Positions 14,881 through 64,000 of a DNA stretch of 64,000 nt are shown here, piece by piece; positions within the stretch are counted from its first letter, which is position 1; each line of letters starts with the position of its first letter. The DNA is from Zygnema circumcarinatum SAG 698-1b (lineage: Eukaryota > Plantae > Zygnematophyceae). The position numbers and the translations under genes were made by a program. The stretch spans positions 1,178,001 through 1,242,000 of the forward strand of contig CM074820.1 in the NCBI GenBank assembly GCA_037447605.1, given 5' to 3'. The notes below the pieces were generated by a model that was not told the origin of the DNA, did no database searches, and saw only the letters and a list, made by a program, of their open reading frames with translations.

Positions 14881-14891
14881 NNNNNNNNNNT

Positions 14892-17600: not shown

Positions 17601-17611
17601 CNNNNNNNNNN

Positions 17612-19791: not shown

Positions 19792-19801
19792 NNNNNNNNN
19801 N

Positions 19802-23594: not shown

Positions 23595-26084
23595 GGGGTG
23601 AAGAGAGAGAGAGTGGTAAGAGATACGCCGGGAGGTGGGAGGCATAGTTCTCAAAATAAATCGGCAAAACTGAGCAGCACAGACTTCAGGTTTATGTTCA
23701 ACGAGCACAAACGCAACAGTGACAAATTAAACGTCTCAAAATTGAAATAAACAGCGATACAATTAGATGCAGTCTTGAAGAAGGTGAGGAGAGGTCAAGG
23801 GGCTTGTTTCATGGGTGACAGAGAAGAGACTCCATTAGGTGAACAGTAGGGATTCTCTCACACAAAAAGGTCATCATATTCTTGTCTGTAGAGAAAAGTT
23901 TGCTATAGCTGTCAGACCTTTGACACTCCGCTCAGCTCTATAGAACAAAGTTCCAACTGCGAGTCAGCAGGTTGAAAGCTATTACAGAGCTATGCCAGAC
24001 TCACCAACATGTTTCGCATGACGTGGACAAACAAAAAAATAGCAGTCAAGAGAAATCTGTCAGCAGCGACGGATGGAACGGTTGCTCAATAATCTCACCG
24101 TCGACTTCGAAAGTAGATCTGGAGAGAGTCTCAACTCCTTTCCTGTCTACCCCTGCTCTTCCTCCTCCTCCGCCTCCTTCTCCATCATCACCTCCCCCTC
24201 CTCCTCCCCTTCCTCCCCCTCCTCCTCCTCCCCCTCCCCCTCCTCCCCCTCCCCCTCCNNNNNNNNNNCTCCTCCTCCCCCTCCTCCTCCTCCTCCACTA
24301 ACACTGCTCTTGAGCCCGGAAGGAGCACCGACCCTTCCAACCGCTCCCGATCCAAATCCGAACGCAACTTGAAGAGGGACAGGGCCACCCGCTGCTCCAA
24401 ATGCATCCCCCTCCAATGCTTGGCAGAAGAAAATGCAAAATATGCAGCTGTAAACAAGTGATGCATACTCAAGAAAGTAATTCTTTCCCAAGAGAACATA
24501 AAATTTGCAAGTCTCTGTTCGAGCAGCAGAACCTTCCAGCCCGCAAAGCAGATAAGAGCATTGCCACGAAGCAGAGGGTTGAAGGTGGCAATGAAGCGCC
24601 AAACTCACATTTTGAGTCTCGAAAGCCGATCCTGCGGCCAAATGCTCCGCTGGGATTCTCTTGAGATTGCTGCATGCTTCAGATGACTCCCATTATTGAT
24701 GAAAAAGGGATCGATCGTTTGTCAAATGATATAAAAAAGACAGAGTAAAAATGCAGAGACATGACGGGGATATACATCTAAAGTTTGGAAAATGTCAAAT
24801 GGCAGTCTCCCATGATCTAGACAAAGATCTCCACTTTCTCCTTTTTGGAAGTTCACATTGAAGCAGTTCAATAACAAAAATAATAATAATAGTTTAAATT
24901 AGTTTTAATTTTAGTTTTTTAGTGTTAGGGTTTTAGTTTTTTTTTAGTTTCAATAATAGTTTAGTAACTTCAATGGGTGTAATGACGACAGAACTGCTTT
25001 GGACTGGAGTCTCCTGGAAGACATTTGGACCTGCTTTGGATAGTCACCTTAAGCAGAGCTTGCAACGATGCGTCCAGTTTGGTATCTTCCGCATCCGCCT
25101 CCCTGTTGACACAAAAGGCCAGCACATAGCCAGCCGGCAATTTGTCTGGTTTTGCATGTAATTGATCTAACAAACTGACACATGTAACAACCTTGGAAAC
25201 AAACTTTGTCATGTAATCGAAAACTCAGGCATCTGCTAAATATATGAATGCACATGCCAGCTTGGAAAAGGTCATCATTGTTGACTCAAATGGACTCCCT
25301 TTGATAAGGAATTGGATGGAGTTCAAGGCATGTGTAGAGTCTGAAGTTTCTATTTTCACACCACAGAGCGACTATCATAAACCAAATGATTATTCTCATA
25401 AAATTTCACATAGACATCACGTAGGGGCTTGACGTCATCTTACAGCGCATCATGGGACCACCAGAGCGACTTTGTTTTAGGGTCTCTCCCTTCATGTCAG
25501 TTGCCTTTTGCTCTTAGTGCAGTCCAAAGCTTAAGACACAAAGGCCTCCCGAGTTGGCTGCATCAGCGGCTTACTGCTTCACAGTCTTCTTCGGAGCTCT
25601 CCTCGTCGGGACCTTCGGGACAAACCGGGTCTGCACAACACTAGTGACACAGCGACCATAACGACCATGGTACTGCTGTCTTTAGTTCTCTAAATCATAT
25701 AAGTGCTCCATCAATTGGACACTCTACTTCACCTTCCACCTCCAACTCCGATTCATTGCCACTATCATACTCCTCAAACATCCACCCTTCGTTCAAATAA
25801 CTAGAATGCAGACTTCGGAAGAGTCATACCCCTCGGCGGAGGAGCATAACAGCTGACTCAGCAGCAACCTCGGGCTGCAGAAGGACAGAAACTGAAGAAA
25901 AGGGAGAAGGAAAGGAGGGGGAGAGGAAGATGCACACCTTCTTGACGCCACCGTGAGTGAGCTCCTCCTTCACTTCAGGCTTCACATCGCGGCCTCCTCC
26001 TCCTCCGCTCCCGCTCCCGCCCCCCGCCAGCGAGCCCAGGCGTCCCCCGCTCCGCGGCGGCGCACCGTCCTGCGCGGGCGCCAT
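22175..26084 (-). CDS. RPC4: RNA polymerase III subunit RPC4/RPC53, multi-exon
   Basis: TRFVPKVPTRR, QVAFGFG, KKEWRDPL, DYSRNYPTTLPLRLP, ERLLFFQLPSSLP, LSDLPGGLMGKLKIHASGAVKLHLGSVVLEV and GAKCMFHQELAAVN..LGDVTQRVVLTPDMDNLL. The start codon and small exons are approximate. Confidence 0.88.
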
Positions 26085-27668: not shown

Positions 27669-30600
27669 ATGACTAAGATTGTAATTCGGGTGATAGACAT
27701 GTATGACTTCCGCATGGAAGTGACCTTGGAAGAAGCTGTGACTCTAAATCAGGTGCAAGAGAGAGTGAAGGAGCAGGGCCGAGTATGGTGGGCATACGAA
27801 GCAAACCGAGGCGTTGGTTGGTACTTACAACCGCAGGTTGCAAACTCTACACAGAAGGAATATCGAGAGGATTCAGAAAGCATCGCAGCAACCTTCAGTG
27901 CGTCCTTAGGACTTTCCTCGCCTCTAAGCTTCTCAAGTTCAGGCAATGCCATTCTGTTCAAGAAGCTTGTCAGGAAGGGCGTGCCCCCAGTTCTTCGGCC
28001 CAAGGTCTGGAAAGCCATTTCAGGAGCTGCAAAGAAGAAAGCAACGGCACCTGAAGATTACTACCGCGAACTTCTGCGAGAGGTTCTCGACAGAGAGACG
28101 AAGGCAACAAAGCAGATTGATAATGTAGGGGCTTATGACCATCACATTCACCTCGGGGGAACAAGACTGCATGCTTTTTAAATGGTATTCCTGAATGATG
28201 GCAAACTGGTTTAGGGGGATTGGCGTTTAATTGTGCTGGTCCACAGACAAATGTGATATGTGGGCAAGTGGGTCATATAGATGTCTTTATTGCCAGCCCG
28301 CCAGGTTGCAGGAGTTGTTACAATGCCTCGTGTTCCTGGAAGTTGGGGACACGCCAAAGCTTATCTCCTCCTCGTGTTGAGTTCACACTTGTAGCACGTC
28401 TGGTTCAGCCACTAGCGAGCTGTGATTTCCTTGTGTGGGTCACGGATGACCTTTCAGTGACATATCATTCTGCAGTCGTGCAATGTTGAGTATAGATCAC
28501 GGTGTTCAATTCACACGCTCTGCTCAATTGTTCCAATGGGTTATAGCCGTCGACCCTCGTACGTGGATGGCATAGGTTTGAGGCTGCAGGAGTGGTGCTC
28601 TTTACCTGTTGGTGAACTTTAGCTGTATGTAAAGTTGGCACATGCAAATCCTGACAACTTTGTATCTGAATCCTCTCAATTGTCCCAAGATTTATCTGCG
28701 TGATTTTGGATCATTCAGGCTTGTTCTCCTCTTAGCTTCAAATCTGAGCATTGTCGTCTTGCAAAGCTCCTGCGATGGGCTCGTTGGCTCTTTCCTTTCA
28801 TATCCGACAAGGAATGGCAAGTAAACGTGACTGACGATTAACAGCGACACTGATTGTCTTGATCACTTTCCATAGGCAGCATGGGATCTTCTGTAAGCTG
28901 CTGTGTTGGCTTATCGGTCTGGACTGACAAAAGTTTTCGGATATCCTCTCATGTACTCCTGGAGCTGACTGCAAATTGTCTGTTACATTGGCAGGATTTG
29001 CACAGAACATTTCCTGGGCATGCCAAAATAGATTCTCCCGAAGGACTGCAATCTTTGAAGCGGATACTAGTGGCCTATTCATGGAGGGACTCTCGCGTAG
29101 GCTACTGCCAGGCAAGCAGCTGTGCCTAGGAACTTCTTGCACCCAAGAAAAGTTTTTGGTTCGTTAATCAGTCTTAGTCGAATCCACTTGCAGTAGCCTT
29201 CCATGAACTGGTATCATCATTTTCTGAGGCGGTAGTCGCTGACAGGCTTTATACCCCATTCGATGAGTTACTATACTAGTTATGGAATTTAGCTGGAAGA
29301 GCGGTATTCAAGGGAACTTTCTGGACGCATCTTTCAATGACTAAAGGCAGGAAAAGCAGCCGTATTCTTTGGAAGGAATTTTGACTCTGAAATCTGCAGT
29401 GCAATATCTGCAATCGTTGTTTTTTGTCATGTTTAGGACAGAAACAACCATACACCAGAAGTGTGAAGTTGTCGATTTGCGGGTCAGTATTATGCTGACG
29501 GGGACATTTTCCTAATGCTGCAGGGTATGAATTTTGTGGTAGCGTATCTCCTCTTGGTCATGCGCGATGAAGAGGAGGCCTTTTGGATGCTGGCCACATT
29601 ACTGGAAGAGGTTCTCTACAACGACTGCTTTTCAGAGGACCTTTCTGGCACTCACGTTGAACAGCGAGTACTGAAAGACTTGTTGGTGAAGAAACTTCCA
29701 AAGTGAGTCTGCCAAGTCTCAGCTTGCATGTCTCATTTTTGAGCCGTGAAGATGCAGAGGTTAGGGCGTACTCAGGCCACAGAAGTAGCTATTTTAGGTG
29801 TTTAGGAAAATGGGACGTCACTACCTATAACTTAATGCACACTTGGCTGAATTCCCTTGTCGTCCGGAAGCCTCTGCAACGCCCTTAGTTTGTCAATTTT
29901 GGCCTCTGCTTGCAGATTAGCAGCACATCTGGATGAGATCAACTTTGAGGTGTCCCTTGTGACGACAGAGTGGTTCTTGTGTCTCTTCGCCAGAAGTTTT
30001 CCCACAGAGGTGAGTGCCTTTACTATTGTGGCCACGAGCTGAGTCTATCCACCTATTCTACCCTTACCATGTTTCGAAAAATTCAACAGCATCGGCATTA
30101 TCTAGGTTTTCTATCATTGCTGAGTAGTCTATGTTTCTGGTTGGCTTGGCCCCCTAAGCGCTACTACACACCGCTCTTGTTTGTGGCTTTTGTACCACTG
30201 TTATTGATAGAAAGACATTAAACTGCTTGCAGAACTCCATAATGTTGGTCCAGAGAGGAAATTCCTGAAAAAAATCAAATCACCTACTAGTAGTTTTCCA
30301 TCGGCTGGAGATCCTTGTAAATTTTCTTTTACTAAAAACGGAAATGAGGATAATCCCTAGCGCAAATAGTCAAGTGAAATTGATACCAATAGAAGCATCT
30401 GGTTGCAGCCTTACTTGTCTATCTAAGAATTCCATCAATAAAGTAGCCATAATACCTACACCGCCTGCTCCTATGATGACCACCAATGAAGTTCTAGAGC
30501 CATCTAGTAAAAACGCAATGACAATACCTGACCACACGGAAATCCTTTACAAAGACAGAAGGTCGCTGAACGGGCCACTGATAGTCTAATGCTCTAATGC

Positions 30601-31887
30601 CACTGTACAGCTTACTCTTGCAATAGGTTTTTTGAATGTCTGCTTGTTTTAACCTTTTTTTACTAGCTTGCCATGTTTATAAGTTGACCCTCAACCTACT
30701 CACGCTTTCCTTCAATCCACAGTAGGCTGTGTCGAAAGAATTGAACAACTCGTCCATTGGACTGTTCCAAAATAGACTTTGGCAATATTGTTGTGGCTCG
30801 TGTATGGACGCTTCGTAATGTCCATGTTCAAGTTCAGGCTTGATGATATTTCCAGTTAATAAGAAGAGGGGATTAGTTCATTGCCTCTTCTCTGACTTAT
30901 TTACGCTCATGGCTTGTGCAACGGCTGCGTGCAGACCACAATGCGAGTTTGGGACGTTCTGTTCAGTGAAGGGGCTAAGGTGCTCTTCCGTGTGGCTTTA
31001 GCCATTTTCAAGGTACTCTTGAGGGAGCTCTCTTTTTCATTGAGGAGGAGCCTAATCTAGGCTACTTCTAAGCAATGTTACATTTCAGAATGCGACCATT
31101 TCAGACATTGCGATCAGGGATTTCAATCAAGCGATCAGAGATTTCAATCACTGATATCTTCGACTGATTTCAATGTCAACAGCTGATCTCTTAGGAACCA
31201 TCATGCGACATTTGCTGTTACGATACTAAGGGTGAGGTATGGGCCGTTTACAGATAAAGGAGGAGGAGCTTCTTAAAGCAACGCATCTTGGAGAGGCCAT
31301 CCGAATTTTGCAGAACTCAACTCATCATATGTTTGACCCAGATTCGCTTCTCAAGGTGCATGTCATCCTTTTGCCGTTCTTGATAGCTGTCATGGTTCCT
31401 ATGCTATTTTCCAGCCTGAGAATTTCTCGGTTAGAAGCAAGCTTTGGGTTGTTGGAGTTGTTATGTGTATGAAGCAAGGACCTCCAGGGTTGCAAAACGA
31501 GGGGAAAGACGGGGAGGTAAGTTTAGAAGTTTCTGATGGCTGGTAGACTTATTGATGAACTCTCATAGCAGGTTCAAAAATAAACCAGTGCAGGTGCTGT
31601 GTTGAAACGTCAAAATCAATACTAGAGCCTAAATGTCATCCCCCATCTCACCATCGGAAAATCACTCTGTACTGCAGGTAGCCTTTGATAAACTTGGGCC
31701 TATGTCTATGACGGCTATTTCTAAGCAACGGCAGAAGCAGCAGCCGGCCGTTAGGGCTGAGCTGGAAGAGCGGGAAAGAAACAAGCCTGTACTGGCAAAG
31801 TCTTGCAGAGAAAACGAGCTTGCAGGTGAGGGATCAGCTCTTGGAGCCACTACTGATGACTTGCGGGGTCGGAGCGTTTCGCTATGA
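27669..31887 (+). CDS. TBC-domain Rab GTPase-activating protein (plant Ypt/Rab-GAP, GRTP1-like)
   Basis: VKEQGRVWWAYEAN, KKLVRKGVPPVLRPKVW, KQIDNDLHRTFPGH, AYSWRDSRVGYCQGMNFV, EEEAFWMLA, VTTEWFLCLF, TTMRVWDVLFSEGAKVLFRVALAIFK and VAFDKLGPMSMTAISKQR. The true start may lie further upstream. Confidence 0.92.
30069..30221 (+). pseudogene. Intronic fragment resembling the N-terminus of bacterial apolipoprotein N-acyltransferase (Lnt)
   Basis: MFRKIQQHRHYLGFLSLLSSLCFWLAWPPKRYYTPLLFVAFVPLLLIERH fits the LS.LS..L.WLAWP...PLLF.AFVPLL.IE pattern I recall for Bacteroidota Lnt; truncated. Confidence 0.6.
30328..30540 (-). pseudogene. Intronic fragment resembling a bacterial Mn/Zn/Fe ABC-3 transporter permease
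   Basis: GIVIAFLLDGSRTSLVVIIGAGGVGIMATLLMEFLDRQVRLQPDASIGINFT*LFALGIILISVFSK matches the ABC-3 motif DA.IG..FT.LFA.G..LIS; in-frame TGA at 30370-30372. Confidence 0.7.
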
Positions 31888-34521
31888 CGTATTGGACGAG
31901 GCGTGAAAGGGGAAAAAAGGGGACCCCCCCTCCCCCCCGCAAGAAAAACCTCCGCTTAGTTTTTTTTCCACTTCTTATTACTGTTGAGGTCTTTTTTCAC
32001 TTTTTATTACTGTAGAGGCGGCGTTAGGACCAGTTCGCCACTGGTGAGCTGATTGTATCCAGTAGCATTTAGTTGTAGCCATTCACAACATCGTTTTTTA
32101 AGAGTAGAGTTGTGAGAGAGCTCTATGGCGGGGTCCCTGCCGGAAATAGCCTGTGAAAAGGTGCGAATAGGAATTGGATGCGGCCCGGCGTATCGGCGAG
32201 GGACCCTCAACTACCACCAAGCAGGAAAAAGTCGGTCTTCTCTCTCTCGCAGTTCCCCAACCCTAAAAGACCCTGTTCTCCCACCCGTAGGTCTTTGGGC
32301 CGGGTTTGGCAAGCACAATGCTTTGCAGCATTCCTCTGTTCTCTGAGAAGGTCCTGCGTGGAAGGGTCCCTCCTATGACAAAAACTTCGTCTCAAGACAG
32401 ACGCTCCCTTGGGCCCTATTTCTCGAACGGTTTATAGAAAGACAGTAATACTGTAGGCCATACATTATAAATTCCAAAGCCTAAGTTTAAGCCTCTCTGT
32501 GACAGGAGGAGATGGAATGGGCAGGCATGGAGACTAAGTGGAGACTTCGAAGCAAAGAAGTATTATTTTGGGGCAGCCCGAATAGGCGAGAATTGGCTAA
32601 GTCCGATTTTTTCTGTCCCTTCTAGAGAGAACACTGGAGAGCTTTCTGAACCCCGCGGAAAGTCCCTCTAGGAATCCATTATTGGGGTTTATGTTGTGGA
32701 GGAATGTGAAAGGCATAGGAGGGCCTTTCAAGGTCGTGTAATGTAATTTTTTTTATATCCAGAGTCACAAAATGGGTATCTGGAAACCAGTTGATGAAAA
32801 TCTTTTTTTTCCTTCCTAAACCTCGCATTGTACCGATTTTTATGGAGCACGAACCATGGAACTGTCTCAGAATTGCCAAGGAAATAAGCAGCTCGGGTTC
32901 AGATTTGTTTGTGCTTCAAATGCTAAAATCAAGTGATATTGATATTGTAGACATTGCTCATAATGTCAAACTCTGAACTGCCAATCAACGGTTGAACCGT
33001 TAAACCAGTGTGAAAGGTGGATTTCCGAATCCACTTGTGGTTGAGGTGGATCTGACATTAGACGAGAGACCGGATGGTTACTGAAACTCATAGAAAAGTC
33101 AAGACAAACGAAATATTGGGAGAGGCGTGAGTCTGTGGCATGCACATGTGACGCAGTTGCGTTCCGTTTTACGGTAACTGCAATGGCGACAGGGGTTAAT
33201 GGAAACGCATTGGCATTGCATTGGCGTCCCTACAAAGCTGTGGATCGGCACTGGTCCCGCGATGTACCCACCCACCGCCCTCCCGCCTCTACTCCATAGT
33301 GCACTCTCATGCCTTCCTCGTGCGTTTCCCCTCTCAAAGAGGCGACGTTTCCTTGGAGCCCCTGTCAAGGGATTGAGGGAGGGAACCACGAGGGAAAGTC
33401 GTTCCCGTCGACCAACCAACAAGGCACGTCAGAACTGGAAAAATCGTCAGTATTACTGAACTGGGAACTATCACTAGTTCCATGCCAACAAGCGATCCAC
33501 ATGGAAAAGAGCGTCATTCACCGTAAAACTTATTCCAGTAATACTAGTGACACAGTTTCTCGTTCAGTTCCTTAAGTCTGACGTACCCCCCTAACGCTAG
33601 CGCATGGAGCGGAGTCAGCAGGCCAAACTTTTATGTGACTCGTGACACAATCCTGGCCGTCTAAATATTACACCAACAGCATCTCACCGTTGATTTCATA
33701 TCACATTCGAATATTCCTTCCAATTTGGACGGTTCGCTTTTTCAACTCGCCCTCACCACGTGGCGTGCACTGATTGTTCTTATCCTCCAATCTGACAAAA
33801 AGTACAGTAAGGCACCGATTATTCGTACACTGATTCCACCGACCAGTCCCTAGATCACTCGGCTGCCAGATCTTTTGATCGACGGTGGAGACCAAATTCC
33901 CCGATTCCCGTTTTGAGGTGTCCGTCCACTAATAGTACACCACGTGGCGACCGGCTTGGCTGTACGGTCCAAGTGGCGGTCGCGTCCAGCGTGGCGCGTC
34001 ATCATTTCGGCCAAAAACGTTGGGACGTGAATTTGGCCGGATCGCGGCAGGCCAAGGCTCGATTTTCGACTTTAATGTTTCTTTGTTCACAGTTTCAACT
34101 TCGCCGTTTCTGGTTCTACTAGTTTTCTATAGCGTTTGCATTGTTTCTATGGAGCGACATGATCAGTGTTTCCACGTGGCGAGTATTGACTGGGGGTTCA
34201 GAGTCGAGATGGAAAAATGATCATCATGGAATGCTTAAAATGCTTAAACTCCGTTAAACAACGTCGTTGGGTATCTCAGAAATTGCATAGAACCGTGCCA
34301 AATAAAGGTTTCGGACGCGTGCGAACATAGAAATCATGCGACTGTTGCACGACGCCGCGGAACATGGAACGTTGACTTTGGAGGAGTATCGCGATATATC
34401 TCTACTATACGATACTGAAAACAACAAGAACAAGAAATTGGGACCGGCCCTGGGAGGTGGCAGGGCTGCAGGCAGGGCCCTCCCTGGTTGCCCTGGAGCT
34501 GCAGCCCTGCTTCCTGGCGCC

Positions 34522-63772: not shown

Positions 63773-63897
63773 TCGGTTTCCGGTTTCTGGTTTCTGGTTT
63801 CCGGTTTCCAGTTTCTGGTTTCCGGTTTCCGGTTTCTGGTTCCTGGTTTCCAGTTTCTGGTTTCTGGTTTCTGTCTGGTTTCTGATTTCTGGTTTTT
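63773..63897. repeat. 7-bp tandem repeat (GGTTTCY/AGTTTCT)n upstream of beta-tubulin copy 2
   Basis: Direct reading. Confidence 0.9.
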
Positions 63898-64000
63898 TGC
63901 AGTTTTCAGTTTTCGTACGGCGCTGTAGGCTTCTGACAGGTCTTCAAGCTGGCCTTTGAGACGGAGGCTTTGGGACGAGCTTCGAAAAGAGTACTCTAGG

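What the first reader, a model, noticed from the sequence alone, without database searches (positions are those of the whole stretch)
30010..30934. TBC intron looks like a scrambled mosaic of bacterial DNA fragments
Seen: a normal GT-AG intron (925 bp, no N gap) of a conserved eukaryotic gene holds, within about 500 bp, a plus-strand Lnt-like N-terminus, a short unexplained piece, and a minus-strand ABC-3 metal permease piece. Each is cut off mid-protein and the segment appears more AT-rich than the exons. Established: Lnt and ABC-3 permeases are prokaryotic families, and organellar insertions (NUPT/NUMT) are often mosaics of short pieces joined during break repair. Inference: the same process captured DNA from an associated bacterium, possibly a Bacteroidota symbiont, recording a host-symbiont association in the nuclear genome.
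Basis: partly seen in the sequence, partly recalled or inferred. Interest (0 to 1): 0.8.

Follow-up and report, generated by a model that had tools for sequence, protein, structure and literature searches.

The report
Dead bacterial DNA scraps inside an algal intron
An intron of an ordinary green-algal gene carries about 500 letters of dead DNA from a small-genome bacterium related to known intracellular symbionts (Amoebophilaceae), which suggests, but does not prove, that such a bacterium once lived in or with this alga.

Summary
Window 30010-30934 is a real GT-AG intron of a RabGAP-TBC gene, and RNA contigs show it spliced out exactly there. It holds two bacterial gene fragments:
- Codons about 5-62 of an Lnt gene, at 30044-30218 on the plus strand.
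- Pfam ABC-3 profile positions about 41-110 of a metal permease, at 30324-30540 on the minus strand, with one TGG-to-TGA stop.

Between them lie 105 unexplained bases.

Each fragment is 82-85% identical in DNA to its nearest sampled relative. In trees, both fall in one clade of uncultured Cytophagales (Bacteroidota) with genomes of about 0.9-1.05 Mb. That clade includes MAGs labelled Amoebophilaceae. On one 1.05-Mb relative the two genes lie about 640 kb apart, so this is a true mosaic.

Contigs from two DNA studies and two RNA studies bridge every junction with no differences, so it is not a contaminant misassembly. Bases unique to the alga make up about 6% of both pieces and are spread evenly over codon positions. 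This fits one insertion followed by neutral decay.

The insert is an inert fossil, most likely pasted in during break repair. A symbiont donor is inferred, not shown. It is a new member of a known kind (Wolbachia insertions in animals, rickettsial DNA in Volvox). Three unchecked or partly checked notes from this scan report other Bacteroidota-like scraps elsewhere in this genome.

The parts
29917..30009 (+). Exon of the host RabGAP-TBC gene, upstream of the intron
   Evidence: Pfam PF00566, 27.4 bits, profile positions 152-181. Part of the spliced RNA contigs of X8 and X9.
30010..30934 (+). GT-AG intron of 925 bases, spliced out exactly at these ends
   Evidence: The joint 30007>30933 (cut +2) skips 925 bases with GT..AG ends in RNA contigs of two runs. 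Depth is about 120-160 for the spliced contig and 2-7 for the intron pieces.
30010..30043 (+). 5' end of the intron, with no bacterial match; taken as native intron
   Evidence: It does not align with the sequence upstream of Lnt in relatives. No blastn or tblastx hit.
30044..30218 (+). Fragment of a bacterial lnt gene (apolipoprotein N-acyltransferase), about codons 5-62. It lacks the native start and the catalytic domain, and carries one extra codon
   Evidence: phmmer E 1.7e-8 to the Lnt protein P0001. 72-80% protein identity to the P0128 clade. 82.3% DNA identity over 164 bases to L039. Boundaries from alignment A3. Tree placement.
30219..30323 (.). Unexplained filler of 105 bases between the two bacterial pieces; it continues neither gene
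   Evidence: No hit in Pfam or NCBIfam, in Rfam or tRNA scans, or in blastn/tblastx against 40 loci. It begins with an 11-base match to the acceptor of the previous intron, which may be chance.
30324..30540 (-). Fragment of a bacterial ABC-3 metal-transporter permease gene, residues about 39-110 of about 290, with a TGG>TGA stop at 30370-30372
   Evidence: Pfam PF00950, 25.7 bits. 84.5% DNA identity over 207 bases to L033, and 82% to L040 and L001. Up to 82% protein identity over 72 residues. Alignment and stop codon. Tree.
30541..30934 (+). 3' part of the intron, with no bacterial match; taken as native intron
   Evidence: No family, RNA or locus hit. Together with 30010-30043 it makes 428 bases, within reach of the neighbouring introns of 213-412 bases.
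30935..31012 (+). Exon of the host RabGAP-TBC gene, downstream of the intron
   Evidence: Pfam PF00566, 25.7 bits, profile positions 183-209. Part of the spliced RNA contigs.

Best explanation
About 500 bases of DNA from one bacterium were pasted into an existing intron of a RabGAP-TBC gene, 34 bases after its 5' splice site. The bacterium was a small-genome member of the Cytophagales, within or next to the Amoebophilaceae.

The insert is a patchwork: a piece of lnt on the plus strand, 105 bases of unknown filler, and a piece of an ABC-3 permease gene on the minus strand. These are two loci that lie far apart in a relative's genome. That pattern is what end-joining repair of a chromosome break produces when it captures loose DNA fragments, as it does for organelle-derived inserts.

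The insert has no function. It is transcribed as part of the pre-mRNA, removed by normal splicing, and has since decayed neutrally by about 6%, including one stop codon.

Shown: bacterial origin, donor clade, unlinked loci, physical continuity with the gene, and correct splicing. Inferred: the repair mechanism, a single event, and that the donor lived inside or closely with the alga.
For: - Origin and clade. The ABC-3 piece is 84.5% identical over 207 bases to L033, and 82% to the 1.05-Mb MAG and to Amoebophilaceae MAG OZ254961. The Lnt piece is 82.3% identical over 164 bases to L039.
- Trees. The ABC-3 piece sits inside the clade that holds the Amoebophilaceae MAG. The Amoebophilus asiaticus group is the neighbouring clade, and free-living Cytophagales lie outside. 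The Lnt piece sits inside a 24-33-row set with SH-aLRT support of 95-99 that holds P0159 (labelled Amoebophilaceae) and P0137.
- Same genomes hold both genes. Lnt P0137 and ABC-3 P0033 lie on one 1,047,305-base contig about 640 kb apart. Contig lengths also tie P0160 and P0150 to the genomes that hold P0026 and P0018.
- Continuity. The X1 contig covers 28500-32500 and the X5 contig covers 28500-31628, both with 0 differences. Intron contigs from RNA runs X8 and X9 bridge all four internal junctions.
- Splicing. The joint 30007>30933 is seen in RNA contigs.
- Decay. Alga-unique bases number 13 of 216 in the ABC-3 piece and 10 of 161 in the Lnt piece, with codon positions 11:4:8 overall. Differences between the bacteria fall 73% on third positions, so the alga's pattern differs from theirs (P = 0.00016).
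- Size. The intron is about 500 bases longer than its neighbours.
Against: - No donor genome is sampled closely; the best match is 85% in DNA and 82% in protein. The junctions therefore cannot be placed to the base, and microhomology cannot be read.
- The filler and 428 bases of the intron are unassigned.
- All DNA runs may come from the strain that was assembled, so there is no population or sister-species evidence, and the date is only a rough guess.
- Nothing shows that the donor was intracellular. Small genomes and the family label are circumstantial, and many relatives come from plankton metagenomes.
- The rest of the genome could not be searched, so a larger parent insertion elsewhere is not excluded.
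Confidence: 0.8

Rival explanations
1. Intron gain. There was no intron here before; the foreign DNA landed in the exon, and the whole 925 bases became a new spliceosomal intron.
For: The bacterial DNA starts only 34 bases from the 5' splice site. 428 bases of the intron have no known origin and could also be foreign. The coding sequence is seamless across the intron, with Pfam positions 181 and 183 on either side. From my own knowledge, an intron of mitochondrial-DNA origin has been reported (Curtis and Archibald 2010); I did not retrieve that paper here.
Against: The 34 bases that carry the GTGAGT donor site do not match the sequence upstream of lnt in relatives. The unassigned 428 bases equal a normal intron length for this gene, where neighbours are 213-412 bases. 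No clear duplicated target sequence flanks the intron.
Confidence: 0.08
2. Secondary copy. The pieces were not captured directly from a bacterium. They were copied or shuffled from a larger, older bacterial insertion, or from a horizontally acquired gene, elsewhere in the alga's genome, perhaps by a mobile element or by repair.
For: Notes from this scan report other Bacteroidota-like scraps in the same genome: s1-378339, s1-400613 and s1-390356. The filler could be host DNA. The rest of the genome was not searchable here.
Against: No second copy exists in the 64-kb window. No terminal repeats or transposon hallmarks flank the segment. Both pieces show the same low level of alga-specific change. 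Either way, the ultimate source remains the same bacterial clade.
Confidence: 0.1
3. Artefact. Contaminant bacterial reads were wrongly joined to the alga's gene during assembly, or the similarity is chance.
For: Algal cultures are rarely free of bacteria. All full-length DNA holders may be the source data of the assembly.
Against: Per-run contigs from two DNA studies span the exons and the insert with 0 differences. RNA-run contigs from two further studies bridge each internal junction as unspliced intron. The pieces are truncated, one has a stop, and both carry non-synonymous decay. The E-values are far beyond chance.
Confidence: 0.02

Closest known systems
Nuclear Wolbachia insertions in arthropods and nematodes, including species that no longer carry Wolbachia (PMC12693587, PMC3798261)
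   Same: Dead, fragmented DNA from a small-genome bacterium sits in host chromosomes and can serve as a record of a past association.
   Different: The donor is a member of the Bacteroidota (Cytophagales, Amoebophilaceae-like), not an alphaproteobacterium. The host is a green alga related to land plants. No living partner is known. This insert is tiny, about 0.5 kb.
Rickettsial DNA of about 9 kb in the nuclear genome of Volvox carteri strains that lack the endosymbiont (Kawafune et al. 2015, PMC4324946)
   Same: Bacterium-to-green-alga transfer of non-functional gene-like sequences, interpreted as a trace of a former endosymbiont.
   Different: The Volvox insert keeps several genes in bacterial order, and related living endosymbionts are known in other volvocine algae. 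Here two unlinked fragments are scrambled inside an intron, and no living donor has been seen.
NUPT and NUMT mosaics: organelle DNA pasted into nuclear DNA by end joining (established knowledge)
   Same: Short pieces from distant loci are joined in mixed orientation with filler, often in introns, and then decay neutrally.
   Different: The source is not an organelle. The nearest relatives are Cytophagales bacteria at 82-85% DNA identity.
Amoebophilaceae: Candidatus Amoebophilus asiaticus and Cardinium (PMC12342168)
   Same: The donor's ABC-3 and Lnt genes fall in or beside this family. Sampled relatives have complete genomes of 0.9-1.05 Mb.
   Different: The known members live inside amoebae, arthropods and nematodes. 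An association with a streptophyte alga was not found in the papers searched.

Membership tests
Nuclear insertion of bacterial (endosymbiont) DNA | The sequence is of bacterial origin | tested here: met
   Both pieces are 82-85% identical in DNA to Cytophagales contigs. Pfam ABC-3 scores above its cut-off. The phmmer hits are Lnt proteins.
Nuclear insertion of bacterial (endosymbiont) DNA | It is physically continuous with host nuclear DNA | tested here: met
   DNA contigs of X1 and X5 span the exons and the insert. RNA-run contigs bridge all internal junctions. The intron is spliced from the TBC mRNA. Caveat: the DNA runs may be the source of the assembly.
Nuclear insertion of bacterial (endosymbiont) DNA | It is non-functional and decaying | tested here: met
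   Both genes are truncated. There is a TGG>TGA stop. Alga-unique changes are spread evenly over codon positions.
Nuclear insertion of bacterial (endosymbiont) DNA | The donor is, or was, a symbiont of this host | not testable with these tools
Among 120 ABC-3 relatives from public data, none is more than 82% identical to the fragment. This needs read mapping to the MAGs, FISH or electron microscopy.
ABC-3 metal permease (PF00950) | A match to the family profile above the curated cut-off | tested here: met
   25.7 bits against a cut-off of 20.1, profile positions 41-90 of 258.
ABC-3 metal permease (PF00950) | A complete open gene | tested here: not met
   Only about 72 of about 290 codons are present, with an internal stop and sharp loss of homology at both ends.
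Apolipoprotein N-acyltransferase Lnt (LNT_N + CN_hydrolase) | A match to the family domains | tested here: inconclusive
   The fragment itself has no Pfam or NCBIfam hit. Its best database matches are the N-termini of proteins that carry both domains.
Apolipoprotein N-acyltransferase Lnt (LNT_N + CN_hydrolase) | A native start codon and the catalytic CN_hydrolase domain | tested here: not met
   Homology covers only about codons 5-62. The ATG at 30069 aligns with ATT or AGG in relatives. Homology ends at 30218.
NUPT/NUMT (organelle-derived insert) | The source is the plastid or mitochondrial genome | tested here: not met
   The nearest relatives are Cytophagales bacteria. The surrounding gene order is that of Bacteroidota: GldH-Lnt-RecX and DUF72-ABC-3-DUF3127-H+-PPase.
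RabGAP-TBC host gene (PF00566) | The flanking exons encode a continuous TBC domain | tested here: met
   The three exons match profile positions 91-151, 152-181 and 183-209.

The most novel reading that the evidence does not exclude
This alga, or a recent ancestor, housed an intracellular Amoebophilaceae-like bacterium that has since been lost or never been noticed. This intron is one of a scattered set of nuclear fossils from that one partner. Three other Bacteroidota-like scraps are flagged in the same genome. Together they could be used to reconstruct and date a symbiosis, unknown in the papers searched here, in the algal lineage closest to land plants.
Probability: 0.35. Interest if true: 0.65.

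Novelty: new member of a known kind. Interest (0 to 1): 0.5.

Why it matters
Dead bacterial DNA in a host chromosome is one of the few durable records of who lived with whom. Such records are well known for Wolbachia in animals and have been reported once for rickettsias in Volvox.

Here the donor belongs to, or sits beside, a family known only as intracellular symbionts of amoebae, arthropods and nematodes. The host is a green alga related to land plants. In my searches I found no paper on such a pairing.

If the other flagged scraps in this genome trace to the same clade, they would show repeated or massive DNA leakage from one bacterial partner. They would also give a testable lead, through FISH, read mining and sister-strain PCR, to a hidden or lost symbiosis.

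The case also shows that bacterial DNA can settle 34 bases from a splice site without disturbing splicing. By itself the insert is inert and small, so its value is as a marker, not as a new mechanism.

Tried and rejected
- Pfam and NCBIfam on the Lnt piece gave nothing. The call rests on phmmer and on the relatives instead.
- Ten stop-free segments from the filler and the 3' flank gave no Pfam or NCBIfam family. Rfam and tRNA scans of 29900-31050 gave nothing.
- blastn and tblastx of the intron against all 40 fetched loci (436 kb) hit only the two known pieces.
- I tested the idea that the two genes are neighbours in the donor, because a 724-residue ORF next to ABC-3 in L001 looked like the RecQ next to Lnt. 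I rejected it: that ORF is an H+-pyrophosphatase. On the 1.05-Mb contig the genes are about 640 kb apart.
- I looked for a living donor in public data. The best ABC-3 protein is 82% identical to the fragment, so none was found.
- A metagenome scan with the Lnt piece gave only 43-82% matches, the highest over 17 residues. A search with the N-terminal region of P0002 gave two more proteins.
- There is no second copy of the intron in the window. No flanking terminal repeats were found.
- A tblastx hit at 63774-63938 is a simple 7-base repeat, not bacterial DNA.
- A paper search for assembly GCA_023898545 and JAAGZP found nothing. One paper search failed on a term that was too long.
- I did not search the joined, spliced TBC protein. 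The exons were searched one by one by reference.
- The host species is coded in the tools. That it is a streptophyte alga comes only from earlier notes.
Full report
**The host gene and its intron.** Window 30010-30934 lies between two exons that continue one RabGAP-TBC domain. Exon 29917-30009 matches Pfam PF00566 positions 152-181, and exon 30935-31012 matches positions 183-209. Contigs of two runs that behave as RNA (X8 and X9; X9 is labelled 'DNA?' but holds spliced contigs) carry the joint 30007>30933. That joint skips 925 bases with GT..AG ends, and the neighbouring introns of 412, 213, 241 and 322 bases are also spliced out. The stretch has no N. I searched the exons one by one by reference and left out the joined protein.

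**The ABC-3 piece.** On the minus strand, 30373-30543 scores 25.7 bits on Pfam ABC-3 (cut-off 20.1) over profile positions 41-90. NCBIfam zinc and manganese permease models give weak hits.
- A scan of one genome per bacterial species returned two loci. One is the Amoebophilaceae MAG OZ254961.1, a chromosome of 899 kb, at 77% protein identity. The other is the uncultured Cytophagales MAG OY970075.1, 1.06 Mb, at 73%.
- DNA identity is 81.6% over 190 bases to the first of these, 84.5% over 207 bases to L033 (NCBI GCA_023898545.1), and 82% over 214 bases to L040.
- Alignment shows sharp loss of homology outside about 30324-30540 and one TGG>TGA stop at 30370-30372.

**The Lnt piece.** Family libraries find nothing for 30069-30218.
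- A phmmer search of 1.84 billion representatives gives seven hits. The best has E 1.7e-8. Four of the five hits scanned carry the LNT_N domain, and two of those also carry CN_hydrolase.
- The genes of these hits sit in a GldH-Lnt-RecX arrangement. GldH is a gliding-motility lipoprotein that I take, from my own knowledge, to be typical of Bacteroidota.
- A search with Lnt P0128 listed about 45 close proteins and then a drop to free-living Cytophagales at 51% identity or less. The fragment is 72-80% identical to about 20 of the close set and 82.3% identical in DNA over 164 bases to L039.
- DNA alignment places the homology at 30044-30218. The ATG at 30069 aligns with ATT or AGG in relatives, so it is accidental. 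The native start is absent, there is one extra codon, and homology stops at the TAA at 30219.

**One donor clade, two unlinked loci.**
- In a tree of 120 ABC-3 permeases, the fragment groups with P0019, P0024, P0025 and P0028 (SH-aLRT 84). That group lies inside a 21-row clade with the Amoebophilaceae MAG. The Amoebophilus asiaticus group is the neighbouring clade, and Fulvivirga, Cyclobacteriaceae and Imperialibacter lie outside.
- In a tree of 121 Lnt proteins, the fragment lies inside sets of 24-33 rows with support of 95-99. These sets hold P0159, named Amoebophilaceae by NCBI, and P0137. They sit within a 50-row clade with support of 100 that leaves the named free-living Cytophagales outside.
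- P0137 (Lnt) and P0033 (ABC-3) are on the same 1,047,305-base contig, near 756 kb and 111 kb.
- Contig lengths also link P0160 to OY970075.1, and P0150 to the contig that holds P0018.
- The ABC-3 neighbourhood (DUF72, ABC-3, DUF3127, H+-PPase) is conserved in relatives and holds no Lnt.
- The intron therefore joins two distant loci of one kind of genome, in opposite orientation, with 105 bases between them that continue neither gene.

**Not an artefact.** A 6.7-kb contig of X1 covers 28500-32500, and a 4.9-kb contig of X5, from another study, covers 28500-31628, both with 0 differences. Low-depth contigs of the RNA runs cover 30009-30395, 30095-30479, 30481-30643, 30527-30690 and 30678-30873. 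Every internal junction is thus bridged in unspliced transcript. The DNA runs may be the source of the assembly, so they are not fully independent. The RNA runs come from two further studies.

**Decay and age.**
- Differences between the alga's ABC-3 piece and each bacterium fall mostly on third codon positions, for example 25 of 37 against L033. Most of the distance therefore arose in working bacterial genes, which means the true donor has not been sampled.
- Bases seen in the alga alone number 13 of 216 in the ABC-3 piece and 10 of 161 in the Lnt piece. Their codon positions are 11:4:8 overall.
- This fits an even spread and not the bacterial pattern of 73% at third positions (P = 0.00016).
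- Equal levels of about 6% in both pieces fit one event followed by neutral decay. Turning this into years would need this alga's mutation rate. I offer only 'not recent, probably millions of years' as an inference.

**The unexplained parts.** The filler 30219-30323, the 34 bases at the 5' end and the 394 bases at the 3' end match nothing in Pfam, NCBIfam, Rfam, tRNA scans or the 436 kb of fetched relatives. The two flanks together make 428 bases, close to the size of this gene's other introns. This is why I favour insertion into an existing intron over intron gain. GC is 0.40 in the insert, against 0.42-0.48 in neighbouring introns, so the AT-richness is slight.

**Mechanism.** The pattern is short pieces from distant loci, mixed orientation, filler and sharp ends. 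It is the one known for organelle DNA captured during end-joining repair (established knowledge). I infer the same process here.

**Whether the donor was a symbiont.** This rests on three things: the family label, the complete genomes of 0.9-1.05 Mb, and the occurrence of related permeases in protist data sets (P0057 from MMETSP, P0087 from EukProt). It is not shown. No protein closer than 82% identity to the fragment exists among the 120 best public relatives.

**Context and novelty.** Bacterial DNA fossils are well known for Wolbachia (PMC12693587, PMC3798261) and have been described for rickettsias in Volvox carteri (PMC4324946). Amoebophilaceae are known as intracellular symbionts of amoebae and invertebrates (PMC12342168). 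Among 28 papers that mention the family together with algae, none of the 15 listed concerns a streptophyte. Earlier notes from this scan report a sufB scrap (followed up), an EF-G scrap and an 864-base two-gene Cytophagales-like scrap in the same genome. I did not check these. I class the finding as a new member of a known kind, of moderate interest.

Noticed in passing
window 63775-63900: An array of a 7-base tandem repeat (GGTTTC followed by C or T). It gave a spurious tblastx hit to a metagenome contig.
   Followed up: partly
window 29906-29916, 30223-30233 and 30925-30935: The 11 bases CTGCTTGCAGA at the acceptor of the previous intron recur exactly at the start of the unexplained filler, and with one change at this intron's own acceptor. 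This could be a small patch templated during repair, a cryptic acceptor, or chance; about 0.2 such matches are expected in 1.3 kb. No RNA joint uses the copy at 30223-30233.
   Followed up: partly
proteins P0057 and P0087: ABC-3 permeases of this bacterial group are filed under eukaryote data sets: an MMETSP transcript and a EukProt gene. This hints that such bacteria travel with cultures of microbial eukaryotes.
   Followed up: no
run X9: A run labelled 'DNA?' holds spliced contigs of the TBC gene and only low-depth intron pieces, so it behaves as RNA.
   Followed up: yes
L033 (NCBI GCA_023898545.1, contig JAAGZP010010275.1): The closest DNA relative of the ABC-3 piece sits in an assembly with more than 10,000 contigs and of unknown nature. 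It could be a eukaryote genome project that carries its symbiont. No paper was found.
   Followed up: partly
window 14881-14890, 17602-17611, 19792-19801, 24259-24268: Four assembly gaps of 10 N each lie upstream of the gene. None is near the intron.
   Followed up: no
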